IMG/VR virus record: IMGVR_UViG_3300028394_002328
Span: 1-64,000 of that record
Reading direction: 5' to 3' (one strand)
DNA: 64,000 nucleotides
Below, piece after piece: positions 39,086-60,800 of the stretch (position 1 is the first letter of the stretch; each line of letters starts with the position of its first letter). A program made the translations under genes and the position numbers. Below the pieces are notes generated by a model. The model saw only the letters and a program-made list of their open reading frames with translations, was not told where the DNA came from and ran no database searches.

Positions 39086-39087
39086 AA

Positions 39088-46344: not shown

Positions 46345-46352
46345 TATTTATA
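46345..46352 (-). promoter_or_regulatory. Putative late promoter, perfect TATAAATA on the minus strand
   Basis: The plus strand reads TATTTATA; the motif ends 7 nt before the minus-strand ATG at 46337. Confidence 0.6.
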
Positions 46353-46368
46353 TGGTAATATAGTCTAC

Positions 46369-46376
46369 AATAAATA
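46369..46376 (+). promoter_or_regulatory. Putative late promoter (AATAAATA), divergent partner
   Basis: Ends 5 nt before ATG 46382. Confidence 0.5.
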
Positions 46377-46381
46377 ATGCA

Positions 46382-47524
46382 ATGATTGTGAATAATCTTA
46401 AATTCTATTATATAGATACTGTATCTGCCTCAGATAATGAAGTCCCTTCAATTAGGTACGCCAGTGCTTATCAATCGTTGCCGATATATTCTAACCATAA
46501 TTATTATTACATAGAATTTAAACGGTCTCTTTCTAGTTTATCTGAATGTTTGATTAAGGACAATGTATTACATCAGCTAGTACACGGTGACTTATACCTT
46601 GCGCTATGTAATAGTCATGAAGCCTTTCATTCTGTAGTTGATGAAGTATATGAACACGCTGTAATAGAATTAGCCATTCCTGAACATAAGATTATATTAA
46701 TAAGCGAATCAGCGGATATAGTCACTGAAGTTAACGATGTGGCATTACAATTGGGTAAACATCCTATTAAAACTCTTTGGGCTAGAATTTTTGAATGGGC
46801 AGGTAATAGATATATTAATTCCGTTTTAAACGGTAAAACTAATCCCAAATTAATAGACAAATCTTTTGGTAAAGCTTTTTTAAATTTTAATAGGAGATGG
46901 AGAACACACAGACCTGCTTTAGTAGCATTATTATTTGCTAATAATTTATTAGATAGGGGTTATGTAAGTTTGGCTCCGGTAGAGGGAACGAATTGGGAAC
47001 TGATTTGGTGGTCATTAGTATCGTATCATAATGAAGAGATATCTACATTGTTAACAATGTACAAAGACGATATATGCAACATACCTCCTTTATTTTTAGA
47101 CGCCGAAAATATGGAAGTCAACCGAGTTGAACATAGTGAGTCAGTAGCATATTTGTATAATGACAGTTATTTTAGCATAGTGACTGAAACAAATTATTAT
47201 GCCAATCAACCGGGACGATTCTTCAGTGAAAAAGTTTTTAAACCAGTTGTTATGGAACATCCATTTATAATAGTATCTAGGCCACATTCACTAGCAAAAT
47301 TTAAAGAATTGGGCTATAAATCATTTAGTCCATATATTGATGAATCATACGATGAAGTAGAAGATGACTCGGAAAGATTACTAGCGATAGTAAACGAAAT
47401 AAAAAGATTGTCTCTTTTATCCCCTACAGAATTGTCAGAATTTTTAATCAATGTAAAGCCTATATGCGATTATAATTTTAAAATTTTGTTAACTAAAAAA
47501 AATTTTATTACCCATTTAAATTAA
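46382..47524 (+). CDS. Putative glycosyltransferase (GT10-like C-terminal domain), copy B
   Basis: 'KAFLNFNRRWRTHR', 'SYFSIVTET...FFSEKVFKP...HPFI...DESYD'; full-length paralog of 41314..42543. Confidence 0.55.
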   Translation: MIVNNLKFYYIDTVSASDNEVPSIRYASAYQSLPIYSNHNYYYIEFKRSLSSLSECLIKDNVLHQLVHGDLYLALCNSHEAFHSVVDEVYEHAVIELAIPEHKIILISESADIVTEVNDVALQLGKHPIKTLWARIFEWAGNRYINSVLNGKTNPKLIDKSFGKAFLNFNRRWRTHRPALVALLFANNLLDRGYVSLAPVEGTNWELIWWSLVSYHNEEISTLLTMYKDDICNIPPLFLDAENMEVNRVEHSESVAYLYNDSYFSIVTETNYYANQPGRFFSEKVFKPVVMEHPFIIVSRPHSLAKFKELGYKSFSPYIDESYDEVEDDSERLLAIVNEIKRLSLLSPTELSEFLINVKPICDYNFKILLTKKNFITHLN

Positions 47525-47526
47525 CT

Positions 47527-48336
47527 ATGACAGATTTATCTAACATTGATTTTGGTAAATATAAACGCTTCTTTGCGTTTGGATGCAGTTTTACTTCATA
47601 TCATTGGCCTACTTGGGCTGATGTATTAGCATCTGAAATGCCTAATGCTGAATTTTACAATTTTGGACATTGCGGTGGTGGTAATTCAATGATATCTAAT
47701 CGCATTGCTGAAGCAAATTGTAGATATAAATTTACCGATACTGATTTAGTTGTGCCGATGTGGACTACATTTTGTAGAGAAGATAGGTATAGAACTGGTC
47801 AATGGATGAGTACTGGTAATATGTTTAGCCAAAATGAATTTGATGAAGAATTTGTGAGAAAATATTGCGACCCAATTGGATATTTGTTAAGAGATTTAGC
47901 AATAATTACTGTTACAAGTACCTATCTTAAATCCTTGCCTTCTGATTCATTCATGTTAAATGGAGTACCTTATACTTATCAAATGGATATTGAAACCGCA
48001 CCATATCCAAAATTAAAAGAAATTTTGGAATTATATAAAGACACTATTAGCTTAACTCCACCTGCATTAGTTGATTTAGAATTAGGAGGTGAATTTAAAC
48101 ACGGTCATGAATACTCAAGGACGCATAATGGTGATTGGTACTTAGACTATCATCCAAACACATTGCATTATAATGGATACCTTAAAAAAATAGGTCTACC
48201 GTTAACATCTAAATCTTCAATGTATACAGAACATTCAATGACATTGTTAAAATCAACTAAAACAGAAGCACAATTGATCATCGCCTTTAATAAAATGGTT
48301 GACGATAGAAATACAAAATTAAAAAATCTTTTTTGA
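47527..48336 (+). CDS. SGNH/GDSL hydrolase-like protein
   Basis: 'FGCSFT', 'GGGNSMI' and 'DYHP' blocks. Confidence 0.6.
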   Translation: MTDLSNIDFGKYKRFFAFGCSFTSYHWPTWADVLASEMPNAEFYNFGHCGGGNSMISNRIAEANCRYKFTDTDLVVPMWTTFCREDRYRTGQWMSTGNMFSQNEFDEEFVRKYCDPIGYLLRDLAIITVTSTYLKSLPSDSFMLNGVPYTYQMDIETAPYPKLKEILELYKDTISLTPPALVDLELGGEFKHGHEYSRTHNGDWYLDYHPNTLHYNGYLKKIGLPLTSKSSMYTEHSMTLLKSTKTEAQLIIAFNKMVDDRNTKLKNLF

Positions 48337-48350
48337 ACTTAGGAATATTA

Positions 48351-50705
48351 ATGAAAAAAGTAACAATGATTGGAGTAGGCAAATTAGGACAAGACTGTGC
48401 TGAGGTAATGGCAGACGCGGGCTATGATGTAATCGGTTATGATATAGAACCTAGGTCACCTAAGTTTCCTATGATGAATACTATTAAAGAAGCAGTCATT
48501 GACCGTGATATTATTTTTATTGCTGCACCAACACCACATGATCCTATATACGGCGGTGAAACTCCTACTAGTCATTTACCTAATAAAGACTTTAATTATA
48601 ATATAGTAATCAATATACTCAATGAGGTAAACATATTCGTTAATAAAAAGCAACTAGTTGTACTTATAAGCACCGTGTTACCCGGGACAGTTCGTAATCA
48701 TTTAGAACCTTGTATTACTAACGCTAGATTCATTTACAACCCATACTTGATTGCAATGGGCACGGTCAAATGGGACATGGTAAACCCTGAAATGATTATC
48801 ATTGGAACAGAAGATGGTAGTATTACAGGTGATGCACAAGAGTTGATTGATTTTTATAATGTGTTTATGAATAATAATCCTAGGTACGAAGTAGGTACTT
48901 GGGATGAAGCAGAATCAATAAAGATTTTTTATAATACTTTTATTAGTACTAAGTTAGCACTAGTGAATATGGTTCAAGACGTAGCCGAAACAAACGGCAA
49001 CATTAATGTAGACATTGTTACCAAAGCATTAGCAAATAGTACACAGCGTATTATGGGCCCTGCATATATGCAAGCTGGCTTAGGAGATGCAGGAGCGTGT
49101 CATCCTAGAGATAATATTGCATTAAGGTATTTAGCCGATAGATTAGACTTGGGCTATGATCTGTTTGATTGCATAATGACCGCTAGAGAAGTACAAGCAG
49201 AGCGTATGGCACTCAGATGTTTAAAGAATGGTAAGAACGTCACTATTATCGGTAAAGCATATAAACCTAAAGTACCTTACACAAATGGTAGCGCTAGCAT
49301 GTTGGTCGGTTATTATATTGAAAAACATGGAGGCTATATTAATTATTACGATGAAAATACAGGTGATTTAGATTTAAAAACAGAATGGACTGAAGTATAT
49401 TTAATTGGATATTGGGAAGATTGGGTGCATCATGCATTAAATAATATTCCATGTGATTATAGGTCAGTAGTTATAATTGATCCATGGAGGAAGATTTCTG
49501 ACCATAATGCATCTTATAAGTTTGAAACTATCGAATACGGTAATACTAGACCAAAAAATATATATGGTGTAGAAAACTCTCAATATCTAATTTATCAAAC
49601 CGGTCATTTAAAGAATTTGTTTGGGTTATGGCCTGAAATGGAAAAACATAAAGATATTATTCATCTCATTGATGCTGAATCAGGTCCAACAAAATTTCAT
49701 TTGAGACCCACGGAATTGATTGTAGAAGAAATATTAGAGGCTTCTAAGAATGGAAAAATTAAATTTTTATTTAATAATTTAGCTGAAGGATATCAAATTC
49801 CAGCAGTAGACAAAATTCACCGCATTGCAAATATATTAGAAAATCAAATTGATTCCAAGAATCTTATATATTTGACATCTTCGCCCGGAGTAGAACAAAT
49901 ATATGAAGATTTGTTTTCCAGTAAAAAGAATAAAAATTGGAAAAATAAAATTTCAATATTGTCTGCCCATGCTTTTCATTTATATACTCAGTGGAGTATG
50001 TTAGAGCTTAAAGAGTTAACTAATTATATAATTAAAGAAAAATCTAAAGATTTTTTATGTTTCAACAAAGTTCCTCGTGAGCATCGAATCAGACTACTTA
50101 ATAGAGTGCTAGAGCATAATATGCTAGATAAAGGTTATTATTCGTTTGAAGGGTTACCAAATTGGTTAGAATTCTTACCATACGAATTTACTAGTATTAA
50201 ATTAAATAAACATAAATTTCCAATAAAATTAAATATAACCCCTGAAAGACCAAATCCGTTAATGGTAGAAGTTCAGGATCTTAAATATTTTGATGATAGT
50301 TATTTTAGTATAGTTACCGAAACAACTTTTTATAATAATGACCATCCGCGTATTGTTAGATATGGGACCTTAGATAATATTTTTATTACTGAAAAGACTT
50401 TTAAATGTTTTCCTGCAATGCACCCGTTCATTGTATTTGCTTATCCTAATTTATTATCTGAATTAAGAAAACTTGGGTATAAAACGTTTGCACCCTTTAT
50501 AGATGAATCATATGATACTATTATCAATGATGATGATAGATTTGAAGCAATATGGAAAGAAATAACTAGATTATTACATAAAACACCTGAAGAATGGATT
50601 CAATGGCAATCTGGCATCAAAGAAATCGTTGAATTTAATAAAAATCATTTTTATTCAAATACAAATTATTCTTCTACCCCTATTGACGATATTTTTGGAG
50701 ACTAA
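48351..50705 (+). CDS. UDP-glucose/GDP-mannose dehydrogenase family protein fused to a GT10-like domain
   Basis: 'IGVGKLG', 'STVLPGT', 'AESIKIFYNTF', 'GACHPRD', 'GKAYKP'; C-terminal 'SYFSIVTET...TEKTFK...HPFI...DESYD'. ATG 48351 preferred over TTG 48333. Confidence 0.85.
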   Translation: MKKVTMIGVGKLGQDCAEVMADAGYDVIGYDIEPRSPKFPMMNTIKEAVIDRDIIFIAAPTPHDPIYGGETPTSHLPNKDFNYNIVINILNEVNIFVNKKQLVVLISTVLPGTVRNHLEPCITNARFIYNPYLIAMGTVKWDMVNPEMIIIGTEDGSITGDAQELIDFYNVFMNNNPRYEVGTWDEAESIKIFYNTFISTKLALVNMVQDVAETNGNINVDIVTKALANSTQRIMGPAYMQAGLGDAGACHPRDNIALRYLADRLDLGYDLFDCIMTAREVQAERMALRCLKNGKNVTIIGKAYKPKVPYTNGSASMLVGYYIEKHGGYINYYDENTGDLDLKTEWTEVYLIGYWEDWVHHALNNIPCDYRSVVIIDPWRKISDHNASYKFETIEYGNTRPKNIYGVENSQYLIYQTGHLKNLFGLWPEMEKHKDIIHLIDAESGPTKFHLRPTELIVEEILEASKNGKIKFLFNNLAEGYQIPAVDKIHRIANILENQIDSKNLIYLTSSPGVEQIYEDLFSSKKNKNWKNKISILSAHAFHLYTQWSMLELKELTNYIIKEKSKDFLCFNKVPREHRIRLLNRVLEHNMLDKGYYSFEGLPNWLEFLPYEFTSIKLNKHKFPIKLNITPERPNPLMVEVQDLKYFDDSYFSIVTETTFYNNDHPRIVRYGTLDNIFITEKTFKCFPAMHPFIVFAYPNLLSELRKLGYKTFAPFIDESYDTIINDDDRFEAIWKEITRLLHKTPEEWIQWQSGIKEIVEFNKNHFYSNTNYSSTPIDDIFGD

Positions 50706-50708: not shown

Positions 50709-52958
50709 TTGGATTTTAACCTAACGTCATTAGCAGTAGATAAGTTAGTTCCTAAAGAACGGCCTACAGAAGATATTGCCGATGCCCGACATCGTAATAT
50801 GATGGAGGCTATAGCGCCCTATGCAAAGAAAACAGAACAAAAAAATCTAACACCTGTATATGTTAATTATAAAACCCGCAATACTAAATTAGTATTGGTA
50901 TTATGTCCTGAATGGAGTCCGTATATGCCGCCCTTTAGTCTAGCTAGACTAAGTGGTATAGCAAAAAGTGCAGGATATGAAACTACTATTATGGATTTGA
51001 ATGTTAGAGCCTATAACGAATATCGTAACGATTGGCAACCTAATAAAAAACTCCCATTCAGACTATGGGATCCTAGTAGCAGTTGGCACTGGCTAGGCGA
51101 GACTTATATGAATGATATTCATCCCGTATTAGAGCCTGTACTTAGTAAAGCAATAGATGATATAGTTGAACTAAATCCTGAAGTAGTTGGCTTTAGTATA
51201 TATTATATTAGTGAAGAGCCAACTAAGTGGATGTGTAAAGAACTCAAACGTAGACTGCCCAATGTAAAAATTGCAGTAGGTGGACCCAACGTACACAAGA
51301 GTTGGTTTAAAGTAGAACCATATTATGATTATGCAGTTGTGGGTGAAGGTGAGGCAAACTTATTAGTATTACTTGAAGAAGTAGAAAACGGTATCAACCA
51401 CAGTGAACCTAAGATTCTAGATCAACCCGAAGAGCAGCGTATCAACATAAATGGCTTGCCTATGCCAGACTATGAGTCTATAGATTTTAGTCAATATGAA
51501 TTGCCTAACGGAGTAAACACAGAAATTAGTAGGGGCTGTACAGCAAAATGTACTTTTTGCGAAGAGACACATTTTTGGCGATATCGTCAGCGTCAATCTG
51601 TTGATTTGATTACGGAAATCGAATGGCTATACTATAATAAGGGTACAGATGTTGTTTGGTTCATTGATAGTTTAGTCAATGGCAACTTAAAAGAGTTGAG
51701 GGCTTTTGTCAAAGGAGTCGCCGCTAAAGGTCTTAAGATTAAGTGGACAGGATATGCCCGCTGTGACGGCCGAATGGATCTAGAATACATGAAAGATTTA
51801 GCTGCCGGTGGTTGTATCATGTTTAACTATGGGATAGAATCCGGTAGTCAAAAAGTATTGGACGATATGGCTAAAGGCGTCACGATTGCAGAGATGGAAC
51901 AAAACTTCATCGATGGTAAAAAGGTGGGTATATGGGCTGCTACAAACTGGATTGTAGGATTCCCCACTGAAAATTTTCAAGACTATGCCGATAGCATGAC
52001 ACTACTATGGCGTATGCGTAATAATAATATTAATAACGCCGGCTTGGGAGTAGGTTATGGCTTGGGCCCTGAAACTATAGTAGGTCAAAATCCGCATAAA
52101 TTTAATATTAGTTGGCACAAGTATCAAGGACATTGGATTACAAAAGACTTGACAATGGGCGGTACTCATGTCATGACTAGAGTAAAAACGTTTCATATGT
52201 TTGCCGATTTTATACAGGGGTGTAGTGAAGTTCCAATTGGTTATCCAGTGAGACACAGTTTAGCAAGAGAACATTATAAAATAGAATTGAATGATCCTAA
52301 GTGTATCAAAGAAATTGAATATGAAAAATTTGATTATAATATTATTAAAGTAGATATTAATCCATTTGCTAATACATTAGTAAATGAAATGTGGCCATTC
52401 TTTCGAATGCTTTGGAAAACTAGAGGTGGATATAAAGCTGTAGTGAAATTTCATCCTGACATTGATTTAAAAGAGTTTGGCAGTCAGTTTGGACCCGGCA
52501 TGTATTATGCTACTTATAAGTTTGATATCACGGATGACGGCAAGTGGGATGCCGATTTTGATATTATTTTTAATCAAGTAGATAATATATTTGACGATAG
52601 AGAACGTCCGCCTCTAGGTAGAAAAGGTCCTTTTTACGCACAAGACTATAGTAGAATTCAAGCTAATACAGCCAAACGTGCCCGTAAATTAGCAAAGCCA
52701 ACATGGAGCGATGAAGAAGGTAGAGATGGACAAGATTTTACAGACTTGTTAAATGAAGAACAAATGTTAAATGAAACTATTGATTTCTCATTTAAGCTAC
52801 ATTGGGTTGAGTCAGGTGATTGGGGCAACTATGCCGACTATGAAGTTAAAGTTTCTGATACTACTACCGTTGTGATTCCTGAAAAGAAAGCAATGTCGGC
52901 TACAGAATTTGCTACAATTGACGTAACATCTATTAAAAAACGTGAACCCAATACTTGA
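50709..52958 (+). CDS. B12-binding-domain radical SAM enzyme (class B methyltransferase-like)
   Basis: 'PPFSLARL...VVGFS...IAVGGP...VVGEGE' cobalamin-binding domain; 'RGCTAKCTFC'; 'GIESGSQKVL..M.KG'; 'IVGFPTE'. Confidence 0.9.
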   Translation: MDFNLTSLAVDKLVPKERPTEDIADARHRNMMEAIAPYAKKTEQKNLTPVYVNYKTRNTKLVLVLCPEWSPYMPPFSLARLSGIAKSAGYETTIMDLNVRAYNEYRNDWQPNKKLPFRLWDPSSSWHWLGETYMNDIHPVLEPVLSKAIDDIVELNPEVVGFSIYYISEEPTKWMCKELKRRLPNVKIAVGGPNVHKSWFKVEPYYDYAVVGEGEANLLVLLEEVENGINHSEPKILDQPEEQRININGLPMPDYESIDFSQYELPNGVNTEISRGCTAKCTFCEETHFWRYRQRQSVDLITEIEWLYYNKGTDVVWFIDSLVNGNLKELRAFVKGVAAKGLKIKWTGYARCDGRMDLEYMKDLAAGGCIMFNYGIESGSQKVLDDMAKGVTIAEMEQNFIDGKKVGIWAATNWIVGFPTENFQDYADSMTLLWRMRNNNINNAGLGVGYGLGPETIVGQNPHKFNISWHKYQGHWITKDLTMGGTHVMTRVKTFHMFADFIQGCSEVPIGYPVRHSLAREHYKIELNDPKCIKEIEYEKFDYNIIKVDINPFANTLVNEMWPFFRMLWKTRGGYKAVVKFHPDIDLKEFGSQFGPGMYYATYKFDITDDGKWDADFDIIFNQVDNIFDDRERPPLGRKGPFYAQDYSRIQANTAKRARKLAKPTWSDEEGRDGQDFTDLLNEEQMLNETIDFSFKLHWVESGDWGNYADYEVKVSDTTTVVIPEKKAMSATEFATIDVTSIKKREPNT

Positions 52959-53526
52959 GTTTGAAACGGTTATAAAAGAATATTATAACAGCCCATATGC
53001 GGTTACAACTGATTGTTGTACCCACGCTATTGAACTATGTATTAGGTTATTAAAGCCAACTGAGGTATCATGTCCAAAACACACCTACCTAAGTGTTCCA
53101 ATGACATTTGAAAAATTAAATCTAGATTGGAGATTTAAAAATTTTAAATGGAATGATTATTATTATATAACTAATAATATTATTGATGCGGCAGTATATT
53201 GGAAGCCCGATGGATATATCCCTAATACATATATGTGCTTGTCATTTCAATTTAAAAAGCATTTAAATGTGGGTAGAGGTGGCATGATATTAACCGACGA
53301 TTATGAATCTTATAAAAAATTAAAAAAGATGAGTTATGATGGTAGGCTTCCCGATATTGCATGGGCTGAACAAGACGTAGACACATTGGGTTATCATTAT
53401 TATATGACACCTGAAACTGCTGAGTTGGGTTTAGATAGATTTCACGAAGTAAAGGACATTGAACCTAGACAATGGTCTTGGAAAGACTATCCCGACTTAA
53501 CAACAATGAGTGTATTCAAATGCTAA
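52942..53526 (+). CDS. DegT/DnrJ/EryC1/StrS-like PLP aminotransferase (short form)
   Basis: 'DCCTHAI', 'IIDAA', 'SFQFKKHL..GRGGMILTDD', 'GYHYYM'. Confidence 0.8.
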   Translation: MNPILEFETVIKEYYNSPYAVTTDCCTHAIELCIRLLKPTEVSCPKHTYLSVPMTFEKLNLDWRFKNFKWNDYYYITNNIIDAAVYWKPDGYIPNTYMCLSFQFKKHLNVGRGGMILTDDYESYKKLKKMSYDGRLPDIAWAEQDVDTLGYHYYMTPETAELGLDRFHEVKDIEPRQWSWKDYPDLTTMSVFKC

Positions 53527-54482
53527 GTAAAAACGAGTGGGATCCACTTAAAACCGTGATTGTTGGTATAGCAGATAATGCTACTAGACCAATTATATCT
53601 ACAAGCGTTAGGACTGTTAACTATGCTGATGTAAAAGATGTGAGTACGATTGAATGTGGTCCATATCCTGTACAAGTCATAGAAGAAGCGAATCAGGATT
53701 TAGAAACACTATGTGATTTTCTTAAGAAAGAAAACATTAAGGTATTACGCCCTGAAGCAAATCATCCTAGGTATTATAACTATTGCCCAAGAGATACGGT
53801 ATTAATACATGATGAATTAGTATTGGCTACACCAACTGCACTAAGTGAACGACGCCATGAATGGACTAGTTCTGCGAAGCATTTAAATATAGTTACAGTA
53901 GCACCTATACCAAATGATGATATAATTTATAATACTGAATGTATAGGTAATCCTGATATTTTAGCATTAAATGAAATAGATCCTTGTTTTGATGCTGCTA
54001 ATATTATTAGAGCAAATGAAGACCTTTATTATCTAGTTAGTAATACTGGTAATAAAAAAGGTGCAGAATACTTAAGGTCATTGGGCAAAACTGTACATAC
54101 TATTGAAAACGTATATAGTTATATTCATATTGATAGTACTATTGCATTTTTGCGTGAGGGTTTAATGTTGTTAAACCCAAAAAGAATTACGAATGTCAAA
54201 GAACAATTACCCAAATCATTGCATAATTGGGATATAATATGGGCTACTGAGCCAATAGATATTGGACATTACCCCGGTATATGCAATGCTAGTGTTTGGA
54301 TAAATGTAAATTTGTTATCTATCAATCCTAACTTAGTAGTTCTAGAAGAACACCAACACAATTTACGAATAGAATTAGAAAAATACGGTATTGAATCAGC
54401 AATGTTACCAATGCGTCATGCTAGAACATTAGGTGGTTGTTTTCACTGTGTGACATTAGATTTAGTTAGAGATGATAAATGA
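53520..54482 (+). CDS. Amidinotransferase (glycine/inosamine-phosphate amidinotransferase family)
   Basis: 'NEWDPLKTVIVG', 'CPRD', 'FDAAN', 'HIDST', 'GGCFHCVTLD' with Asp/His/Cys catalytic residues. Start 53520 preferred over 53472. Confidence 0.9.
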   Translation: MLSKNEWDPLKTVIVGIADNATRPIISTSVRTVNYADVKDVSTIECGPYPVQVIEEANQDLETLCDFLKKENIKVLRPEANHPRYYNYCPRDTVLIHDELVLATPTALSERRHEWTSSAKHLNIVTVAPIPNDDIIYNTECIGNPDILALNEIDPCFDAANIIRANEDLYYLVSNTGNKKGAEYLRSLGKTVHTIENVYSYIHIDSTIAFLREGLMLLNPKRITNVKEQLPKSLHNWDIIWATEPIDIGHYPGICNASVWINVNLLSINPNLVVLEEHQHNLRIELEKYGIESAMLPMRHARTLGGCFHCVTLDLVRDDK

Positions 54483-56200
54483 GTAAATGGCGTCGAGGAC
54501 ATGTTGGTAGATTTTGGTATACTGAAGAGGTTAAAAATCTTACATATATTAAACAACCGATAACTCAAGATGAAGTTGACCAATGGGTATCTAAAGGTTA
54601 TGATTACGTAAAGAGCTTTACGGGCAGCATGTATGATAATAAAAACCCAATGCCTGAATTTATTAATAGACTTAAAGATATCTTTTACAACTATAAAAAT
54701 CTTACGTTTACTTTTTATAAAATGAGTACATTGGAAATTATGCCTGAGCATTCTGATCACTATAATACATATATGAAATTATATGGGGCAGATTACAAAA
54801 ATGTACACCGCATCTTATTAATGTTAGAAGATTGGAAACCCGGACATTATTTAGAAATAGATGGCACTGGTATTATTAATTGGGTAGCAGGTGATTACTT
54901 TATTTGGGAAAATGATTGCAAACATGCTGCTGCTAATATAGGTGTAGAAGATAGATATACTTTACAGATTACGGCTGAAATACTTAGCGACAACTCAACT
55001 GACTATAAACTACATTGGTATAATATTCCTGATAGAGAATCAAAAACCGAATCATCTCAATACTATATGAATAGGGTACTAAACGGAGTAACTGATAATA
55101 TAAGAAATGAACCATTGTATATTTACATGCTTAATCAACAAATTGTTGAACTAGAAACAATAATACATGATCAAAGTACAGTACAGTATTTAAATGAAAA
55201 GGGTATTACATTTTATCTAACAGAACCATTATGCGGCTATACAAGATTACCTAGGAAACATACACTATCAATTTATTCAGAATTTAAAGGTGATGAAGAT
55301 TCTTCTGCTTTACGGGCAGACGAGTTAGATAGCATTAAAGAATATGTTATCAGAAATAAATTAACTAATGTTAATGTTTATACATGTGATTATGACGCTA
55401 AAACATATTATCCTTACTATAAATCTTTTATGAATATAGAAACAGATGATTTGTTTATTAGAACCATACCACAAAAAACAGTATTCCATACCAATGTCAA
55501 AGCTGCTTTTAATAAAAAATTTATTTGTTTAAATTGGAGATTTACTCCTCATAGGCAATTATTAGCCGCATACTTGTCTCAAAAATCTAGCACTATTAGT
55601 TGGTATTTTAGGGGAGATTTGCCTGTTGTAGGGCACTATAATTGGATTAGTATTTTTTCACTTAGAGACCCTAAATATTTTAATACTTTAATAGATGGCA
55701 TCACATATCTAAATGCTAACGCACCTCTGAGTGTTGACTTACCTGATGTAGAATCTATCTCTTTATATGATACTGCTCATGGCGAATTTATTCCTAATAG
55801 TCAAATACTGAATAATAGTTCCAATGAGATAATAGAAAATGCTTATTTGAATGTGTTTTGTGATATAGTTACTGAGTCTAGATTCGCTCAGCCAACTGGT
55901 AACTTTAGCGAAAAGGTATTTCACCCTATATGGTATAAAAAGCCTTTCGTATTGGCAGCGCCTCCTCATACACTAAAATATTTAAAAGAAGAAGGGTATA
56001 AAACCTTCAATGAATTTTGGGATGAAAGTTATGATGACTGTGAAAATCATGAAGAAAGATTAATGAAAATATTTGATGTAATAGATTTCATTGATAGTAA
56101 ATCTATAGACGAATTGCGTGAAATGTATGAGCAAATGAAGCCAATACTAAAACATAATTATGATTTAATAAAGCAAAAACTGCCCACAGTAGAAAAGTAA
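54479..56200 (+). CDS. 2OG-Fe(II)/cupin-type oxygenase-like domain fused to a GT10-like domain
   Basis: HxD...H motif ('MPEHSD...KHAAANIG..DRYTLQIT'); C-terminal 'DIVTES...FSEKVFHP...KPFV...DESYD'. Confidence 0.7.
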   Translation: MSKWRRGHVGRFWYTEEVKNLTYIKQPITQDEVDQWVSKGYDYVKSFTGSMYDNKNPMPEFINRLKDIFYNYKNLTFTFYKMSTLEIMPEHSDHYNTYMKLYGADYKNVHRILLMLEDWKPGHYLEIDGTGIINWVAGDYFIWENDCKHAAANIGVEDRYTLQITAEILSDNSTDYKLHWYNIPDRESKTESSQYYMNRVLNGVTDNIRNEPLYIYMLNQQIVELETIIHDQSTVQYLNEKGITFYLTEPLCGYTRLPRKHTLSIYSEFKGDEDSSALRADELDSIKEYVIRNKLTNVNVYTCDYDAKTYYPYYKSFMNIETDDLFIRTIPQKTVFHTNVKAAFNKKFICLNWRFTPHRQLLAAYLSQKSSTISWYFRGDLPVVGHYNWISIFSLRDPKYFNTLIDGITYLNANAPLSVDLPDVESISLYDTAHGEFIPNSQILNNSSNEIIENAYLNVFCDIVTESRFAQPTGNFSEKVFHPIWYKKPFVLAAPPHTLKYLKEEGYKTFNEFWDESYDDCENHEERLMKIFDVIDFIDSKSIDELREMYEQMKPILKHNYDLIKQKLPTVEK

Positions 56201-56203
56201 ATA
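56197..56203 (+). promoter_or_regulatory. Putative late promoter (GTAAATA)
   Basis: Overlaps the upstream stop; followed by AAGGAG RBS and ATG 56222. Confidence 0.45.
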
Positions 56204-56221
56204 CTTATAAGGAGCACATTT

Positions 56222-56320
56222 ATGTTTATATTTAAATGGATTAAGAATATTATCCGAGAATACAAATACCGTAAAAGAATTAAAGAATTACGCAAACGGG
56301 ATCCTTTCATATACAAATGA
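56222..56320 (+). CDS. Small basic peptide (32 aa) coupled to the carbamoyltransferase
   Basis: Translated by hand: MFIFKWIKNIIREYKYRKRIKELRKRDPFIYK*. AAGGAG RBS at 56209-56214; ATGA overlap with 56317. Confidence 0.75.
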   Translation: MFIFKWIKNIIREYKYRKRIKELRKRDPFIYK

Positions 56321-57798
56321 ACTATATAGGAATATCAGCAGGATTCCATGACGCTGCTATTAGTGTGGTAGACAATTCAGGCGACATACTATTTGCTGGG
56401 CATAGTGAACGGTATAGTAAGAAAAAACATGATAAAGACTTATGCCAAAAGTTACTTACGGACGCATTAAGTTACTGTAATTCAGAATCAATAGAGTATC
56501 ATTACTACGAAAGACCATGGTTAAAAGCACTTAGACAGTTACGTAGTGGTGAGGGTTTTGTTTGGCCAAGTTGGAAAAACTTATTAGGTCCCATCTATAA
56601 TCAAATGGGTAAACCAAAGATACATGTACATGGTCATCATCTATGCCATGCAGCAGCAGGATTTCAAACCAGTCCTTATAGTGACGCCACAGTTGTAATA
56701 ATTGACGCTATAGGTGAGTTTGACACTATGACGATTTGGGATGCTAGATATGACCTTATAACTGGCAAGGCTGCCTATGAGAAACTATGGAGTATGCAAT
56801 ATCCAAACAGTGTTGGCTTGTTCTATTCGGCCATGACTGAGCGAGTCGGATTGCGTCCACTAGATGAAGAATATATTCTTATGGGCATGGCTGCATATGG
56901 TCATCCTCATCATGTTGATAATATGTTTGATGCGTTAATAGATGACGATGACATATTGACCTTTAAACAGAACCTACATGTTGGGGTGAGCAAAGAATTT
57001 TTGAAAGATGCTAAAGAAACAGACATTGCTAGTAGTAGTCAACAGATAGCAGAGTATATGATAACTCTAGTTGTAAGCAAGGCTAAACGTTTAGGTAGAA
57101 GTAGAAATCTAGTATACGGTGGCGGTGTAGCATTGAACTGTTTAGCCAACAGATTATTAGGAAATATATATGAAAATATTTGGATTATGCCGAACCCTGG
57201 TGATGCAGGTAATAGCCTTGGTGCAGCATGTCTTGGCTATGGCACTAAACTTAATTGGAGTAATGCTTTTCTTGGCTATGATATCACTGGGGATTATCCT
57301 GTTCACAGGTTACTTGATAGTTTACTTACTGATAGGATGGTTGGTGTTGCGTCCGGTAGGGCAGAATTTGGACCGAGGGCCTTAGGTAATCGTAGTTTGT
57401 TGGCAGATCCTCGAGGTGATGATATCAAAGATAGAGTAAATGAAATTAAGCGTAGACAAAAGTTTAGACCATTCGCCCCTATCATTCTTGAGGAATATGT
57501 ACATGATTACTTTGACATGCCAAAGTCTTGGGGGAATAGTAGGTATATGCAAGTGATTGCTAACTGTAAATACCCTGATCAATTTCCTGCTATCGCACAT
57601 GCCGACAATACTAGTAGGGTACAAACAGTGCCCAAAGATGGATCGGGTATTAGAGAGTTATTAGAGAAATGGTACGTTATAACTGAATGTCCAATGTTGT
57701 TGAATACTAGTCTGAACATTCGTGGTGAGCCAATGGTCAATGACAGGACCGATGCTGACAGATTTGAAAAACTGTATGGGGTCAAAGTTCTGTCATAA
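56317..57798 (+). CDS. Carbamoyltransferase (NodU/CmcH/TobZ family)
   Basis: 'GFHDAA', 'HHLCHAA', 'DAIGE', 'MGMAAYG', 'GGVALNCLAN', 'EFGPRALGNRS', 'RQKFRPFAP', 'LLNTSLN'. Confidence 0.93.
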   Translation: MNYIGISAGFHDAAISVVDNSGDILFAGHSERYSKKKHDKDLCQKLLTDALSYCNSESIEYHYYERPWLKALRQLRSGEGFVWPSWKNLLGPIYNQMGKPKIHVHGHHLCHAAAGFQTSPYSDATVVIIDAIGEFDTMTIWDARYDLITGKAAYEKLWSMQYPNSVGLFYSAMTERVGLRPLDEEYILMGMAAYGHPHHVDNMFDALIDDDDILTFKQNLHVGVSKEFLKDAKETDIASSSQQIAEYMITLVVSKAKRLGRSRNLVYGGGVALNCLANRLLGNIYENIWIMPNPGDAGNSLGAACLGYGTKLNWSNAFLGYDITGDYPVHRLLDSLLTDRMVGVASGRAEFGPRALGNRSLLADPRGDDIKDRVNEIKRRQKFRPFAPIILEEYVHDYFDMPKSWGNSRYMQVIANCKYPDQFPAIAHADNTSRVQTVPKDGSGIRELLEKWYVITECPMLLNTSLNIRGEPMVNDRTDADRFEKLYGVKVLS

Positions 57799-57809: not shown

Positions 57810-60800
57810 ATGAGAGATGTATTTTATTACGGCGAAAAACCCAACGTTCATCCAAAAGAAAAATTTGCAACTTCAATAGAAGATGCTAGGCGTCAATCAA
57901 CGACAGAACATTTTTGGATAATCAATGAATTCTGTGACTATCGCAATTTTGATTGGGATTTTGATTTTGAATTCCTGCCCGATGAAGATGTATGGGCAGA
58001 AGACCATAACAATGTATGGCCTAGTCAACATCAAAAAGACAGTGGCACTTGGCTATGTTCAAAGAAAAACAGTGATATAATTATCTATCGTGCTGATGTT
58101 GACCCTGTTATTCGTAAGAATATAAAGAACGATCACTGGGTATTATTAGATTTAATTGATGAAAATAAATTTGATTTTAGTTGGCACCCTGATCCAACTG
58201 ATCCTCCTTATAATTATAAATGGGGATGTAAGTTTTTTCCAGTAGAATTACAGGCATGTTTAGAATATCGTATTGATGGTGCGTTCAAAACAAAATACAT
58301 GAAAGAAATTGTAGAATTGTTACCACAGTATGATAGATGGGTAGAAGTACAAGAGATAGATAAATTAGCATTTGATATGTCATGGAGACCCAATCCATTG
58401 GATCCCCCTATGAATTATATATGGGGTAACAAATATATTGATGGTAATCTACGTTCAACTCTAGAATACCGTATACCAGGTGCAATTGATACAAAATACA
58501 TGCCTGATTTAATTTCGGTAGTACCTGAATGGGATAAGTGGGTAGAAGTACAAAAAGTAAATAAGTCTACATTTGATTTTACATGGAGACCTGATCCACG
58601 TGAACCTGCGTATATCTATACTTGGGGTAACAAATATATCGATTCTGAGCTAAGGCCAACACTTGAATACCATTGTGAAGGGGCTACTGAACGCAAGTAT
58701 ATGTCTAATGATGTAGAGGTATTACCTGAATGGGATAAGTGGGAAATACTTCATCCTATAGATAAATCTACATTTAATTTTACATGGAGACCTGACCCTA
58801 GAGAACCAAATTTAAATTATGTATTTGGTAATAATCAGTATGACAGTACAAAAATGCCTACCATTATTTACAAAATGGAAGGTGCTACCGATGAAAAGCA
58901 TATGCCGAGTAATGCTAAATTGTTACCACAGCCTAACAGGTTTCAACATTTAGAAGATAGTTATGGCATAGATTATTCTTGGGTTCCTGATCCTACTAGT
59001 CCTCCTTATATATATGTTTGGGGTAATCAATGGAATAACCCTCAAGATAAAATATCTATTCAATATGTAGTTGAAGGAGCAACAGAATACAATTATATGG
59101 CAGAACGTGCTATTCGTAAGCCATGTAAAGATAATTGGGAAATACCTAACAATGTGGATATTACTGGGTTTGATTTTAGTTGGGAACCTAGTCCAGCAGA
59201 TCAACCTTATATCTATCAATTTGGCACTCAATGGCAAAAGACAGGTGGACCAAGATATCTAACACCTGGCGTACATAAAAATAGTGATGTTAAGTATGTT
59301 GATTTACAAAAAGTAAAAATGTTACCTAGTAAAGATAACTTCATTATCTTAGACAATGTTGTTGTAGATGATTTTGATTATAGTTGGCATTCCGATGAAA
59401 CAGAAGAGCCATACATATATGTATTTGGTAATAATTTATACTCTGCTGAAATTATGCCAACTATTCAGTATGTACCTAAAAATGCAGTCAGAGCAGCATC
59501 AGGCAAATCAATTGGACAAATAAAATATGTCAATGATATTATCGCTACGTTAGGAGAGAATAGAAATAATTGGGTAATTAATCAACCAATAGATGAAACT
59601 AAATTTGATTTTAGTTGGGTACCCAACCCCAAAGACCCAGCTTACATATACCGTTGGGGTAACAAATATATTTCTAATGTATATAAACCAACTATTGAAT
59701 ATATAGTTGAAGGTGCAACTGAAATAAAATACATGGACGACAGTGTTGCTGTATTACCCGAGTTTGATCGTTGGTATATCCCATCTAATATTGATGATAC
59801 TGGTTTTGATTATACATGGAGACCTGATCCACTAGAACCTGTATTAATTTGGCAATTTGGTACACAATGGCAAAAGACGGGCGGACCTAGATATACCATG
59901 CCTGGTGCCATTGAAGTCAAATATGTTAGTATACACAAGGTAAAAGCATTGCCTAATAAAGACAATTGGACTATACCTAAAAATATAGATATATCTAATT
60001 TTGATTTCAGTTGGCATCCTGATGATACTTCACCTCCTTACATATATAGGTTTCCCACTCAGTGGGCAATGAGTGGTGGTCCTATTTACACTGTAGTTGG
60101 AGCAACAGAAGTAAAGTATATAGATACCTTTAGGGCTAAAGCACTACCTAGTATAGATAATTGGGAATTCGATTCTAATAATATTGATTTGTCTAACTTT
60201 GACTTTAGTTGGCATCCATACGCAGAAGACGAGCCGTTCATATACCAATTTGGTACTCAATGGCAAAAGACAGGTGGTCCTAGATATTTAACTCCAGGAG
60301 TTCATAAAAATAGTCCTGTAAAATATATTGATACACGCATTATAAAAGCAAAAAGATTACCTAATAAAAATAATTTTATAATCATTGATAATAATGTAAT
60401 TGACAATTTTGACTACTCATGGCATCCTGATGAAACAGAGGAGCCATTTGTTTATATATTTGGTAACACTCAATATCCAGCCGAGATAATGCCTACAATA
60501 AAATATGTTGTAGAAGGTGCTACTCAAATAAAATATATTAATGATGTAGTTGCTGTACTAGGTGAAAATAAGAAAGTTTGGCATATCCCTGATAATATTG
60601 ATGATAGTTCATTTGATTATACTTGGGTGCCTAATCCCAAGGACCCGCCGTATATATACGAATTTGGTACGCACTGGCAAAAAACTGGTGGTCCAATCTA
60701 TGCTGTTAAAGATGCCACTGAAGTCAAATATATTGATTATCAAAAAGTAACCGCATTGCCTAATAAAGATAATTGGACTATACCTGGTAACGTGGATATA

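What the first reader, a model, noticed from the sequence alone, without database searches (positions are those of the whole stretch)
50709..57798. Aminoglycoside-like tailoring set in a phage: B12-radical SAM, DegT aminotransferase, amidinotransferase, oxygenase and carbamoyltransferase
Seen: these genes are adjacent and mostly overlapping. Known: aminotransferase plus amidinotransferase builds the guanidino groups of streptidine (StsC/StrB1), TobZ carbamoylates tobramycin, and GenK/GenD1 are B12-radical SAM methylases in gentamicin synthesis. Inference: the phage may make a guanidinylated, carbamoylated, C-methylated amino sugar. An amidinotransferase is an unusual phage gene, and a cationic decoration could alter adsorption or shield the particle.
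Basis: partly seen in the sequence, partly recalled or inferred. Interest (0 to 1): 0.78.

Follow-up and report, generated by a model that had tools for sequence, protein, structure and literature searches.

The report
Phage sugar-tailoring cluster with amidinotransferase
A freshwater jumbo phage carries, inside its tail-gene region, a conserved set of sugar-modifying enzymes, including a streptomycin-type amidinotransferase, that probably builds an unusual positively charged sugar; no virus has been shown to make one, and the product is still unproven.

Summary
The five genes are real and sit at the stated coordinates, tightly packed. Four family calls hold. The fifth, the "oxygenase", is the first 170 residues of a fusion to a GT-B-like domain. 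The "DegT" is a conserved half-size form of 194 aa. The amidinotransferase gets no Pfam hit, but its profile matches StrB1 over its full length (E 1.6e-81) with all active-site residues conserved.

The set is co-conserved in about 12 phage lineages. The invariant core is mini-DegT, a 2OG oxygenase and the amidinotransferase.

The real unit is larger, about 33.9-57.8 kb. It adds five tandem N-twitch radical SAM enzymes, a TylC3-type sugar 3-C-methyltransferase, an SDR epimerase, a UDP-glucose dehydrogenase, four GT-B-like paralogues and a conserved 32-aa micro-protein coupled to the carbamoyltransferase.

None of these proteins has a predicted membrane segment. Both operons carry the late-promoter-like motif found before the baseplate genes.

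Best reading: a cytoplasmic nucleotide-sugar pathway makes a branched, aminated then guanidinylated, carbamoylated sugar for phage-made proteins. The chemistry is moderately supported. The target is inferred.

The amidinotransferase is not rare in phages. Related modules were noted in Campylobacter phages (2010) and a cyanophage (2025), and none has been characterised.

The parts
33967..40365 (+). Five tandem paralogous radical SAM genes with an N-terminal twitch (half-SPASM) domain: 33967-35373, 35370-36626, 36627-37856, 37853-39085, 39088-40365
   Evidence: NCBIfam NF033640 N_Twi_rSAM, 314-365 bits against a cut-off of 170. Pfam places SPASM at residues ~15-85 and Radical_SAM at ~130-300. 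Paralogy at 23-47% identity.
40350..41327 (+). Sixth radical SAM protein (325 aa, generic)
   Evidence: Pfam Radical_SAM E 4.7e-6; weak MoaA and viperin-type hits.
41314..42543 (+). GT-B-like putative glycosyltransferase, paralogue 1 (409 aa)
   Evidence: BLASTP against the 380-aa protein gives 40% identity at E 1e-76, and it also matches the C-terminal halves of the 790-aa and 573-aa proteins.
42522..43891 (+). Two unknown proteins (216 aa with a weak DUF6071 hit; 240 aa)
   Evidence: Pfam DUF6071 E 0.0099, below threshold.
43888..44238 (-). Unknown 116-aa protein, last gene of the minus-strand operon
   Evidence: ORF only; no family hit.
44231..45439 (-). NDP-4-keto-hexose 3-C-methyltransferase (TylC3/TcaB9 type)
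   Evidence: Pfam Methyltransf_13, _23 and _14. Full-length match to D-mycarose 3-C-methyltransferase 4rv9 at E 5.6e-58 and to TcaB9 at 2e-38.
45432..46337 (-). SDR-type nucleotide-sugar epimerase/dehydratase
   Evidence: Pfam Epimerase E 8.6e-20. PDB 6vo6, a sugar-nucleotide epimerase/dehydratase, at 2e-12.
46345..46376 (.). Divergent intergenic region with one ATAAATA motif on each strand (a T4-late-promoter-like motif)
   Evidence: ATAAATA occurs 12 times against 57 +/- 7 expected. The other + strand copies lie just upstream of the gp25, gp6 and 408-aa genes and just after the giant ORF.
46382..47524 (+). GT-B-like putative glycosyltransferase, paralogue 2 (380 aa)
   Evidence: conserved in related loci.
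47527..48336 (+). DUF6071/SGNH-like protein (269 aa); function unknown
   Evidence: The atlas nearest clusters carry DUF6071 and GDSL-lipase labels. Conserved in related loci.
48333..50705 (+). Fusion of an NDP-sugar 6-dehydrogenase (residues ~1-400) and GT-B-like paralogue 3 (~445-790)
   Evidence: Pfam UDPG_MGDP_dh_N and central domain. TIGR03026 E 6e-38. PDB UDP-glucose 6-dehydrogenases at 4.5e-18. The two halves are separate genes in L005, L023, L025 and L013.
50709..52958 (+). Class B (B12-binding) radical SAM enzyme, 749 aa, with unassigned ~130-aa N-terminal and ~300-aa C-terminal extensions
   Evidence: Pfam B12-binding plus Radical_SAM. All NCBIfam hits are far below cut-off. PDB matches are weak only.
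52942..53526 (+). Mini-DegT: a half-size PLP aminotransferase-like protein (194 aa)
   Evidence: Pfam DegT at 57 bits. AF2 pLDDT 91. Foldseek matches the large domain of sugar aminotransferases at TMq ~0.7. K106 and D82 are invariant. At least 8000 clusters of 194-202 aa exist.
53520..54482 (+). StrB1-like L-arginine amidinotransferase (320 aa from ATG 53520; the ORF opens at 53472)
   Evidence: Profile against PDB: StrB1 1.6e-81, AGAT 3e-49, HsvA, SxtG. Seven active-site residues are invariant. Homologues are 320-325 aa.
54479..56200 (+). Fusion of a 2OG-Fe(II) oxygenase (residues 1-170) and GT-B-like paralogue 4 (~196-573)
   Evidence: AF2 model. VIA Z 13.2 for the oxygenase part and T4 BGT Z 9.5 for residues 196-573. 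AFDB GT1 and Agl5 matches. The HxD...H...R motif is invariant. Separate genes in L013, L021 and L022.
56222..56320 (+). Conserved 32-aa basic micro-protein ending ...RKRDPFIYK; its stop overlaps the next gene's ATG
   Evidence: Present in all 13 loci that carry this carbamoyltransferase. The last 17 residues are invariant apart from one R/K switch, despite many synonymous changes. 191 clusters of ~34-aa proteins exist. It lies next to carbamoyltransferase genes in distant contigs.
56317..57798 (+). NodU/CmcH/TobZ-family O-carbamoyltransferase (493 aa)
   Evidence: Pfam Carbam_trans_N and _C. NovN 1e-46, GdmN 7e-41, TobZ 1e-31.
57810..64000 (+). Giant ORF that runs off the window (at least 2063 aa): 21 or more tandem ~67-aa Trp/Pro-rich repeats (FDxSWxP...Y.FG), then non-repeat domains
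   Evidence: It follows the carbamoyltransferase in 13 loci. No Pfam or PHROG hit.

Best explanation
The finding is the downstream third of a roughly 24-kb, phage-specific, fully cytoplasmic nucleotide-sugar tailoring and glycosyl-transfer cluster (about 33.9-57.8 kb). It lies inside the baseplate/fibre gene region of a 335-kb freshwater jumbo myovirus. Proposed mechanism; all steps are inferred from enzyme families and none is demonstrated. Host UDP-hexose is oxidised by the dehydrogenase domain and reshaped by the SDR. A 4-keto intermediate is C-methylated by the TylC3-type enzyme. The conserved trio then acts in series. The 2OG oxygenase oxidises or hydroxylates. The mini-DegT uses PLP to install an amine on a keto carbon. 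The StrB1-like amidinotransferase moves the amidino group of L-arginine onto that amine through its Cys326 thio-uronium intermediate, which yields a guanidino group and ornithine. The carbamoyltransferase, with its 32-aa partner, O-carbamoylates a hydroxyl through carbamoyl-AMP. The B12 radical SAM enzyme and the five N-twitch radical SAM enzymes modify unactivated carbons by methylation, epimerisation or oxidation. The four GT-B-like domains, two of them fused directly to tailoring enzymes, transfer the sugars onto a soluble acceptor. The most likely acceptors are phage-made proteins such as the giant proteins that flank the cluster, which would give the particle a cationic glycan decoration.
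For: Sugar chemistry: the 3-C-methyltransferase matches TylC3 over its full length at 5.6e-58. An NDP-sugar 6-dehydrogenase and an SDR epimerase/dehydratase are present. The mini-DegT folds like the large domain of sugar aminotransferases. Four paralogous domains are GT-B-like. Amidination: the StrB1 match is 277 bits, against 171 for AGAT and 152 for SxtG. All seven AGAT active-site positions (D170, D254, H303, D305, R322, S355, C407) align to invariant residues, and the AGAT-specific insertions are absent, as in StrB1. Functional linkage: the order UGDH, B12-rSAM, mini-DegT, amidinotransferase, 2OG::GT-B, carbamoyltransferase, giant ORF is kept in 13 loci. The trio is kept in about 12 lineages, including cyanophage S-SCSM2R. 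Mini-DegT relatives also sit in glycosyltransferase clusters in Flavobacterium phages. The phage amidinotransferases form one clade with SH-aLRT 100. Cellular relatives are 40% identical or less, and none of 80 has these neighbours. Cytoplasmic, late, phage-directed target: no protein encoded between 27920 and the window end has a membrane-like segment. The strongly depleted ATAAATA motif marks the baseplate genes and both operon starts at 46.35 kb. The cluster lies next to the same putative structural genes in L013, L021 and L022. In S-SCSM2R a paralogous amidinotransferase and a 2OG oxygenase were detected in purified virions (PMC12801897).
Against: No product, substrate or acceptor has been observed. 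The mini-DegT lacks the C-terminal domain that helps bind the nucleotide in full-size enzymes, so it may not be a classical NDP-sugar transaminase. The GT-B assignment rests on fold only (Z 9.5, 6% identity), with no sequence-level family match. The promoter reading is an analogy with T4, and three motifs lie only 4-7 nt from the annotated start codons. The window shows no 4,6-dehydratase signature of its own and no nucleotidyltransferase. S-SCSM2R's second amidinotransferase lies beside KdsA/KdsB, and CP220's module holds a membrane PAP2 phosphatase; both hint at host envelope glycans. The giant downstream protein has no known fold or proven virion location. The S-SCSM2R authors treated the virion signal as possible carry-over.
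Confidence: 0.4

Rival explanations
1. Host-envelope remodelling. The pathway makes a modified sugar that enters host LPS, capsule or S-layer glycans during infection, for example to block superinfection or alter the cell surface. This is the usual reading of cyanophage 'cell-wall' auxiliary genes.
For: S-SCSM2R has a second amidinotransferase directly beside KdsA/KdsB and many glycosyltransferases. The CP220 module includes two GT-A genes and a membrane PAP2 phosphatase. The S-SCSM2R authors interpret its sugar genes this way.
Against: No predicted membrane protein, polyprenyl-phosphate transferase, flippase or polymerase is encoded between 27920 and the window end. The cluster lies inside the structural-gene block and shares its promoter-like motif. 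It is tightly linked to a giant soluble repeat protein.
Confidence: 0.2
2. Free small molecule. The genes make a soluble aminoglycoside-like antibiotic or guanidino metabolite (guanidinoacetate/creatine-type 'AMG') that is released or used in host metabolism.
For: The enzyme families are those of aminoglycoside pathways: StrB1, DegT, TobZ-type, B12 and twitch radical SAM. S-SCSM2R's authors call three of them antibiotic synthesis genes. An ocean AMG catalogue discusses viral genes of creatine synthesis.
Against: The window has no inositol-phosphate or 2-deoxy-scyllo-inosose synthase, kinase, exporter or self-resistance gene. Four glycosyltransferase-like domains and a giant linked protein are unexpected for a small metabolite. 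The enzyme is nearer to StrB1 than to AGAT. It is never found alone, always with mini-DegT and the 2OG oxygenase, which glycine amidination would not need.
Confidence: 0.1
3. Sugar-free protein or peptide maturation (RiPP-like). The radical SAM array, B12-rSAM, 2OG oxygenase, amidinotransferase and carbamoyltransferase act directly on amino-acid side chains of the giant proteins or of the 32-aa micro-protein (for example Lys to homoarginine or homocitrulline, C-methylation, hydroxylation).
For: The best NCBIfam hit of the B12-rSAM is a RiPP C-methyltransferase model, and SPASM/twitch enzymes often mature peptides. A strongly conserved 32-34-aa peptide is translationally coupled to the carbamoyltransferase. 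Two giant proteins flank the cluster.
Against: All those model hits are far below cut-off. Four enzyme families here are specific to nucleotide sugars: TylC3-type methyltransferase, UGDH, SDR and DegT. Four GT-B-like domains would be left unexplained. The micro-protein is absent from the loci that keep only the core trio.
Confidence: 0.1
4. DNA hypermodification. The sugar is attached to phage DNA bases to evade restriction, as in T-even glucosylation.
For: The best solved-structure match of the GT-B-like domain is T4 beta-glucosyltransferase. Campylobacter phages with a related module carry modified guanine (own knowledge). The S-SCSM2R authors raise DNA glycosylation as a possibility.
Against: The T4 BGT match is fold-level only (6% identity). 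The window has no base hydroxymethylase, DpdA-type or nucleotide-kinase gene. The genes sit in the late structural block, whereas in T4 the DNA-modification genes are early genes (own knowledge).
Confidence: 0.07

Closest known systems
Streptidine branch of streptomycin biosynthesis (StsC aminotransferase followed by StrB1 amidinotransferase)
   Same: A DegT-family PLP enzyme sits next to an amidinotransferase whose closest solved relative is StrB1. Homology is full-length, with all catalytic and arginine-binding residues conserved and a StrB1-like lack of the AGAT insertions.
   Different: The window has no inositol-phosphate synthase, dehydrogenase StrI, kinase or phosphatase. The aminotransferase is half-size. 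A 2OG oxygenase is the third constant partner. The context is nucleotide-sugar and glycosyltransferase genes in a virus. Identity to cellular homologues is 40% or less.
Campylobacter phage CP220/CPt10 'five radical SAM plus glycine amidinotransferase' module (Timms et al. 2010, PMC2853527)
   Same: A T4-like phage with tandem radical SAM genes, an amidinotransferase and glycosyltransferases directly downstream of baseplate hub genes. Function unknown.
   Different: Only 25% identity. No mini-DegT, UGDH, B12-rSAM or carbamoyltransferase was detected there by BLAST. It contains a PAP2 membrane phosphatase. It sits on a very long branch in the tree.
Synechococcus phage S-SCSM2R ORF305-309 ('AHBA synthase', radical SAM, glycosyltransferase, 2OG oxygenase, 'inosamine amidinotransferase'; PMC12801897)
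   Same: The same trio at 53% (mini-DegT), 30% (oxygenase) and 56% (amidinotransferase) identity, in the same clade, embedded in glycosyltransferase genes. This is a cultured carrier.
   Different: A cyanomyovirus of 244 kb. The genes lie in an auxiliary-gene region near psbA/psbD, not next to giant proteins. There is no B12-rSAM, carbamoyltransferase or micro-protein in that cassette. It has been interpreted only by annotation, as antibiotic genes.
Virus-encoded glycosylation of virion proteins (giant-virus fibril glycans; mycobacteriophage capsid and tail glycosylation, Freeman et al. 2023)
   Same: The virus encodes its own sugar-modifying enzymes and glycosyltransferases beside structural genes, and these act in the cytoplasm (own knowledge; the Freeman paper is cited within PMC12801897).
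   Different: No amidino or carbamoyl sugar, radical SAM array or B12 enzyme is known in those systems. Virion glycosylation is not shown here.
O-carbamoyltransferases TobZ, NovN, GdmN, NodU
   Same: Both the Kae1-like and the YrdC-like domains are present, and the HHxxH metal motif is visible.
   Different: Compact at 493 aa, against 570-700. It scores below the NodU equivalog cut-off. It is always preceded by a 32-34-aa basic micro-protein that is not known for the characterised enzymes.
B12-dependent radical SAM methylases GenK/GenD1
   Same: Class B architecture: a B12-binding domain plus a radical SAM core with CxxxCxxC.
   Different: No specific similarity was found. The nearest models (RiPP C-methyltransferase, BchE, PhpK) are all far below cut-off. 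About 430 extra residues are unassigned.

Membership tests
Amidinotransferase family (AGAT/StrB1, pentein fold) | Full-length sequence homology to characterised members | tested here: met
   Profile of 14 phage sequences against PDB: StrB1 E 1.6e-81 over residues 3-319; AGAT 3e-49; HsvA 4e-47; SxtG 2e-43.
Amidinotransferase family (AGAT/StrB1, pentein fold) | Catalytic Cys-His-Asp triad and arginine-binding Asp/Asp/Arg/Ser | tested here: met
   AGAT D170, D254, H303, D305, R322, S355 and C407 align to D108, D174, H219, D221, R238, S274 and C326, all invariant in alignment A1. AGAT numbering is from own knowledge, checked against the chain offset shown.
Amidinotransferase family (AGAT/StrB1, pentein fold) | Pfam PF02274 hit at the gathering threshold | tested here: not met
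   The single sequence gives no Pfam or NCBIfam hit. The family is too divergent for those models, and membership rests on the profile-to-PDB match.
Amidinotransferase family (AGAT/StrB1, pentein fold) | Transfers the amidino group of L-arginine to an amine acceptor | not testable with these tools
   Needs an enzyme assay.
DegT/DnrJ/EryC1/StrS sugar aminotransferases | Pfam PF01041 above the gathering score; PLP-binding Lys and pyridine-binding Asp | tested here: met
   57.4 bits against 19.8. K106 in SFQFKK and D82 in DAAV are invariant in 12 sequences.
DegT/DnrJ/EryC1/StrS sugar aminotransferases | Two-domain fold-type I architecture of about 360-400 residues | tested here: not met
   194 aa. 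The AF2 model covers only the large domain (TM about 0.7 by the query, about 0.38 by the target). The short length is conserved in at least 8000 clusters, so this is a truncated variant and not a pseudogene.
NodU/CmcH/TobZ O-carbamoyltransferases | Carbam_trans_N (Kae1-like) plus Carbam_trans_C (YrdC-like) domains | tested here: met
   121.5 and 158.6 bits, against cut-offs of 24 and 27. NovN 1e-46, TobZ 1e-31.
NodU/CmcH/TobZ O-carbamoyltransferases | Equivalog-level identity with a characterised enzyme (NodU) | tested here: not met
   125.7 bits against a cut-off of 1000. Family member; substrate unknown.
Class B (cobalamin-dependent) radical SAM enzymes | B12-binding domain followed by a radical SAM core with CxxxCxxC | tested here: met
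   PF02310 at 42 bits and PF04055 at 56 bits, both above cut-off. The CTAKCTFC motif is visible in the translation.
GenK/GenD1-type aminoglycoside C-methylases | Specific sequence relationship to GenK or GenD1 | tested here: inconclusive
   No such model is among the hits. Every NCBIfam hit is far below its cut-off. PDB gives only TokK at 2e-4 and an unnamed radical SAM protein.
2OG-Fe(II) oxygenases | Double-stranded beta-helix fold with the HxD...H iron triad and a 2OG-binding Arg | tested here: met
   Z 13.2-10 to many 2OG oxygenases over residues 1-170. H91, D93, H149 and R159 are invariant in 11 sequences. The Pfam hit is below threshold.
GT-B glycosyltransferases | Two-Rossmann-domain GT-B fold | tested here: inconclusive
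   T4 BGT Z 9.5 over 261 residues. AFDB 'GT family 1' E 1.4e-7. Agl5 E 7e-5. Atlas gives a weak GT10 lead at 0.79. No sequence-level family hit. Model pLDDT is 79.
Aminoglycoside (streptomycin-type) biosynthetic gene cluster | Cyclitol-forming enzyme (inositol-phosphate or 2-deoxy-scyllo-inosose synthase) plus kinase/phosphatase, export and resistance genes | tested here: not met
   No such family was found in any ORF of 100 aa or more in the window. The rest of the 335-kb genome was not available.
NDP-hexose 3-C-methyltransferases (TylC3/TcaB9/KijD1) | Zn-binding N-domain plus SAM methyltransferase plus C-terminal domain, with full-length homology | tested here: met
   Pfam Methyltransf_13, _23 and _14, all above cut-off. 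4rv9 at 5.6e-58 over residues 9-376.

The most novel reading that the evidence does not exclude
Aquatic phages carry a widespread phage-specific pathway whose core is a half-size PLP enzyme, a 2OG oxygenase and a StrB1-like amidinotransferase. It would make a guanidino sugar that is further carbamoylated and C-methylated. GT-B-like enzymes would attach it at many sites to a giant repeat protein, for instance at the conserved Ser/Thr of each FDxSW repeat. The result would be a cationic glycan coat on the virion, and a new class of viral glycoconjugate. The 34-aa DPFIYK micro-protein would be a new obligatory partner of carbamoyltransferases.
Probability: 0.2. Interest if true: 0.88.

Novelty: new variant of a known kind. 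Interest (0 to 1): 0.68.

Why it matters
Two of the families are very abundant in aquatic metagenomes. Mini-DegT has at least 8000 clusters at 90% identity, and the amidinotransferase search found 4256 homologues. Both are annotated misleadingly as creatine, antibiotic or dTDP-sugar enzymes, and neither has a known role.

If the pathway makes a guanidino, carbamoyl, branched sugar, it would add a new chemistry to viral glycobiology. It would explain the radical-SAM-rich modules seen since 2010 in Campylobacter phages and in marine T4-like phages. It would also provide compact new enzymes (a 194-aa PLP enzyme and tailoring-enzyme::transferase fusions) for glyco-engineering.

A cultured carrier exists (Synechococcus phage S-SCSM2R), so the question can be tested directly.

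Tried and rejected
- Near-identical DNA search in isolated phages found no match.
- Pfam and NCBIfam gave nothing for the amidinotransferase. This was resolved by a profile search against PDB sequences.
- PHROGs gave no hit for most cluster proteins.
- tblastn of the giant repeat protein and of the GT-B-like domain against isolated phages found no match.
- Pfam at E up to 1 on the giant protein, on its complete relative in L006, on the B12-rSAM extensions and on the small unknown proteins gave only noise.
- The atlas search of the giant protein's non-repeat end returned only unnamed phage clusters.
- The profile of the 573-aa family against PDB sequences found nothing, so fold search was needed.
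- A tree with StrB1, AGAT and SxtG as named anchors could not be built, because no tool supplied their sequences. I used profile bit scores and a tree against 80 cellular relatives instead. CP220 and S-SCSM2R ORF266 are too divergent to place there.
- Ralstonia phage RsoM2USA, which has the nearest isolate carbamoyltransferase, has only 'hypothetical' neighbours.
- The exact T4 late promoter TATAAATA occurs only twice. The shorter ATAAATA is the informative motif.
- A literature search for DPFIY returned nothing.
- No RNA run holds the stretch, so expression could not be checked and read laying was not used.
- I rejected the idea that the 194-aa DegT is a frameshifted pseudogene continuing into the next ORF. 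The length is conserved in thousands of homologues, and the next ORF is a complete amidinotransferase.

Full report
**Source and setting.** The window is the first 64 kb of a 335-kb IMG/VR contig, IMGVR_UViG_3300028394_002328. Window and contig coordinates coincide. The stretch recurs in at least 20 freshwater metagenome runs from 2017 to 2022. A second, 200-kb contig carries it at 95-100% protein identity.

The window opens with a T4-type baseplate block:
- a gp5-like hub at 1084-4827;
- gp25 at 4835-5284;
- a gp6-like wedge at 5337-8708, 31-33% identical to Rak2, Atu_ph07 and Phosso jumbo phages.

A 6344-aa ORF follows at 8717-27751. A second giant ORF starts at 57810 and runs off the window end. 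The finding lies between these two giant genes.

**Observation.** The five ORFs are exactly where stated and are packed. The overlaps are 17, 7 and 4 nt, taking ATG 53520 as the amidinotransferase start.

That start is preferred for three reasons. Homologues are 320-325 aa and cover 94-95% of the longer ORF. In L004 the translation of the tblastn match range, which spans the whole longer ORF, holds a stop codon, and the ORF there is 320 aa. ATG 53520 overlaps the upstream stop codon.

Family calls:
- B12-binding plus Radical_SAM are above Pfam cut-offs.
- DegT is above cut-off, but the protein has only 194 aa.
- The 336-aa protein has no Pfam or NCBIfam hit.
- The 573-aa protein has only a sub-threshold Asp/Asn-hydroxylase hit.
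- Both carbamoyltransferase domains are well above cut-off.

**The amidinotransferase is genuine and StrB1-like.** A profile of 14 phage homologues (A1) matches inosamine-phosphate amidinotransferase StrB1 (1bwd) at E 1.6e-81 over its whole length. Next come AGAT (3e-49), HsvA and SxtG.

I read the printed alignment against AGAT numbering (own knowledge, checked through the 37-residue chain offset). D170, D254, H303, D305, R322, S355 and C407 align to D108, D174, H219, D221, R238, S274 and C326. All seven are invariant in A1. The AGAT-specific insertions are absent, as they are in StrB1.

The family is large: 4256 proteins at E below 1e-5, and the top 120 are all at least 64% identical. Cellular relatives in 185,579 species genomes reach only 35-40% identity. 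None of the 80 best cellular loci has any other gene of this cluster nearby, apart from 3 with a carbamoyltransferase. In a tree the 14 aquatic-phage sequences, including cyanophage S-SCSM2R ORF309, form one clade with SH-aLRT 100.

**The 'DegT' is a conserved half-size enzyme.** Twelve homologues are 194-213 aa and keep the PLP lysine (K106) and the pyridine-binding aspartate (D82). The AF2 model is confident (pLDDT 91). It superposes on the large domain of perosamine synthase, ArnB, PseC, BtrR and others, at TM about 0.7 by the query and about 0.38 by the target. The C-terminal small domain is therefore missing. At least 8000 clusters of 194-202 aa exist, so this is not a pseudogene.

**The 'oxygenase' is a fusion.** The AF2 model (pLDDT 79) splits into two parts:
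- Residues 1-170 form a 2OG-Fe(II) oxygenase fold (Z up to 13.2) with invariant H91, D93, H149 and R159.
- Residues 196-573 resemble GT-B glycosyltransferases: T4 beta-glucosyltransferase at Z 9.5, an AFDB 'GT family 1' cluster, Haloferax Agl5, and a weak GT10 lead.

The same domain occurs four times in the window: the 409-aa and 380-aa proteins and the C-terminal halves of the 790-aa and 573-aa proteins. The atlas shows it fused elsewhere to methyltransferase and SDR epimerase domains, always in phages.

**The other enzymes.**
- The carbamoyltransferase matches NovN, GdmN and TobZ. Relatives are common in cyanophages and pelagiphages.
- The B12 enzyme is class B but resembles no characterised member closely.
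- Upstream on the minus strand lie a TylC3/TcaB9-type NDP-hexose 3-C-methyltransferase (E 5.6e-58) and an SDR epimerase/dehydratase.
- The 790-aa protein starts with an NDP-sugar 6-dehydrogenase.
- Further upstream are five tandem paralogues of NCBIfam N_Twi_rSAM, in which the twitch domain is N-terminal, and a sixth radical SAM gene.

**Co-conservation.** Of 24 IMG/VR loci found through the amidinotransferase, 13 keep the order UGDH, B12-rSAM, mini-DegT, amidinotransferase, 2OG::GT-B, carbamoyltransferase, giant repeat ORF, at 54-91% identity. A 352-kb ENA contig has the same order.

In the more distant lineages (59-62% identity) and in the isolate S-SCSM2R, the fusions are split into separate genes. 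The constant set is mini-DegT, the ~165-aa oxygenase and the amidinotransferase. UGDH, a GT-B-like gene and radical SAM genes usually accompany it. The few loci that lack a partner are cut by a contig end on the relevant side. Counting near-identical loci once leaves about 12 lineages.

**Related modules already seen.**
- Campylobacter phages CP220 and CPt10 have tandem radical SAM genes, an amidinotransferase (25% identity) and two GT-A genes just after the baseplate hub. Timms et al. 2010 described this as an interchangeable module of unknown role.
- The S-SCSM2R paper calls ORF305, 306 and 309 'antibiotic synthesis genes'. It also reports a second amidinotransferase (ORF266) and a 2OG oxygenase (ORF269) in the virion proteome. 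ORF266 lies beside KdsA/KdsB.
- Mini-DegT relatives in Flavobacterium phages sit in glycosyltransferase clusters.
- A marine T4-like genome with 12 radical SAM genes has been noted.
- None of these has been characterised.

**Clues to where the pathway acts.** No protein encoded between 27920 and the window end has a hydrophobic 19-residue segment above 1.6 on the Kyte-Doolittle scale. The window therefore has no flippase, polymerase or polyprenyl-phosphate transferase.

The heptamer ATAAATA resembles the T4 late promoter TATAAATA (own knowledge). It is depleted, with 12 copies against 57 +/- 7 expected. Six of its seven + strand copies lie in intergenic spacers just upstream of gp25, gp6, the 408-aa gene and the 380-aa gene, and just after the giant ORF. 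A minus-strand copy faces the epimerase gene. Both sugar operons thus appear to share the signal of the structural genes. Several motifs are only 4-7 nt from annotated starts, however, so this reading is tentative.

The cluster is also next to the same set of putative structural genes in L013, L021 and L022.

**Interpretation.** Four families here are specific to nucleotide sugars, and there are four GT-B-like domains. This makes a sugar pathway the best-supported reading. The constant trio fits an oxidise, transaminate, amidinate sequence like the streptidine branch. The soluble proteome, the position in the genome and the promoter-like motif favour a cytoplasmic, late, phage-directed acceptor.

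My estimates are about 0.8 that this is nucleotide-sugar tailoring and about 0.6 that a guanidino group is made on a sugar-like amine. I give about 0.4 to the whole model, including phage proteins as the acceptor. The rivals (host envelope, free metabolite, sugar-free peptide maturation, DNA modification) are listed with their evidence.

**Novelty.** The enzyme families are known, and the co-occurrence of radical SAM genes with an amidinotransferase in phages has been reported. The rest appears not to have been described:
- the defined trio and its size in metagenomes;
- the half-size DegT;
- the tailoring-enzyme::GT-B fusions;
- the micro-protein coupled to the carbamoyltransferase;
- the link to a giant repeat protein.

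Noticed in passing
window 56222-56320 (+): A 32-aa basic micro-protein ending ...YRKRIKELRKRDPFIYK fills the 'spacer' before the carbamoyltransferase, and its stop overlaps that gene's ATG. It is present in all 13 related loci. Its last 17 residues are invariant apart from one R/K switch, despite many synonymous changes. 191 clusters of ~34-aa proteins share the motif. In distant contigs it again sits beside carbamoyltransferase-type genes, or inside a CMP-sugar/GT92 cluster.
   Followed up: partly
window 33967-40365 (+): Five tandem paralogous radical SAM genes have their twitch (half-SPASM) domain at the N-terminus instead of the usual C-terminus (NCBIfam N_Twi_rSAM, 314-365 bits). A sixth radical SAM gene follows. 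The substrate is unknown.
   Followed up: partly
window 57810-64000 (+), running off the window; complete relative at L006:12044-16411: This giant protein is built of 21 or more tandem ~67-aa Trp/Pro/Asp/Lys-rich repeats (FDxSWxP...Y.FG), followed by non-repeat domains. Its composition is unlike the Thr/Ser/Gly-rich 6344-aa protein. It has no Pfam, PHROG or isolated-phage match. Repeat number varies between relatives, from 1308 to more than 2200 aa.
   Followed up: partly
window 8717-27751 (+): A single 6344-aa ORF lies directly after the gp6-like baseplate wedge gene. It is Thr-rich (12%) with almost no Cys or His, and is probably a giant fibre or baseplate protein. Only faint FG-GAP-type hits were found.
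   Followed up: no
whole window; motif copies at 4824, 5313, 27755, 27759, 28542, 42792, 46370 (+) and 46345 (-), among others: ATAAATA is about five-fold depleted (12 copies against 57 expected). On the + strand it is almost confined to intergenic spacers just upstream of genes, like a late-promoter signal. The exact T4 octamer TATAAATA occurs only twice, against 19 expected.
   Followed up: partly
window 41314-42543, 46382-47524, 49600-50705, 55060-56200 (+): There are four paralogous copies of a phage-only GT-B-like domain, two of them fused to tailoring enzymes (a UDP-sugar dehydrogenase and a 2OG oxygenase). In other phages the same domain is fused to methyltransferase and SDR epimerase domains.
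   Followed up: partly
L014, L015, L024 (for example L015:10001-10987 and 13887-14873): One phage lineage carries two amidinotransferase copies about 3 kb apart, at 60% and 58% identity to the window's. S-SCSM2R also has two very different copies (ORF266 and ORF309).
   Followed up: no
L019:12212-14271: A distant version of the cluster adds a sulfotransferase, two cyanophage-type 2OG-FeII_Oxy_5 oxygenases and a further radical SAM gene. The tailoring set varies between lineages.
   Followed up: no
window 47527-48336 and 42522-43172 (+): Two unknown proteins resemble the phage family DUF6071, which the atlas links to GDSL/SGNH hydrolases. They may be sugar O-acyl esterases or transferases. The 269-aa one is conserved, and sometimes duplicated, in related loci.
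   Followed up: no
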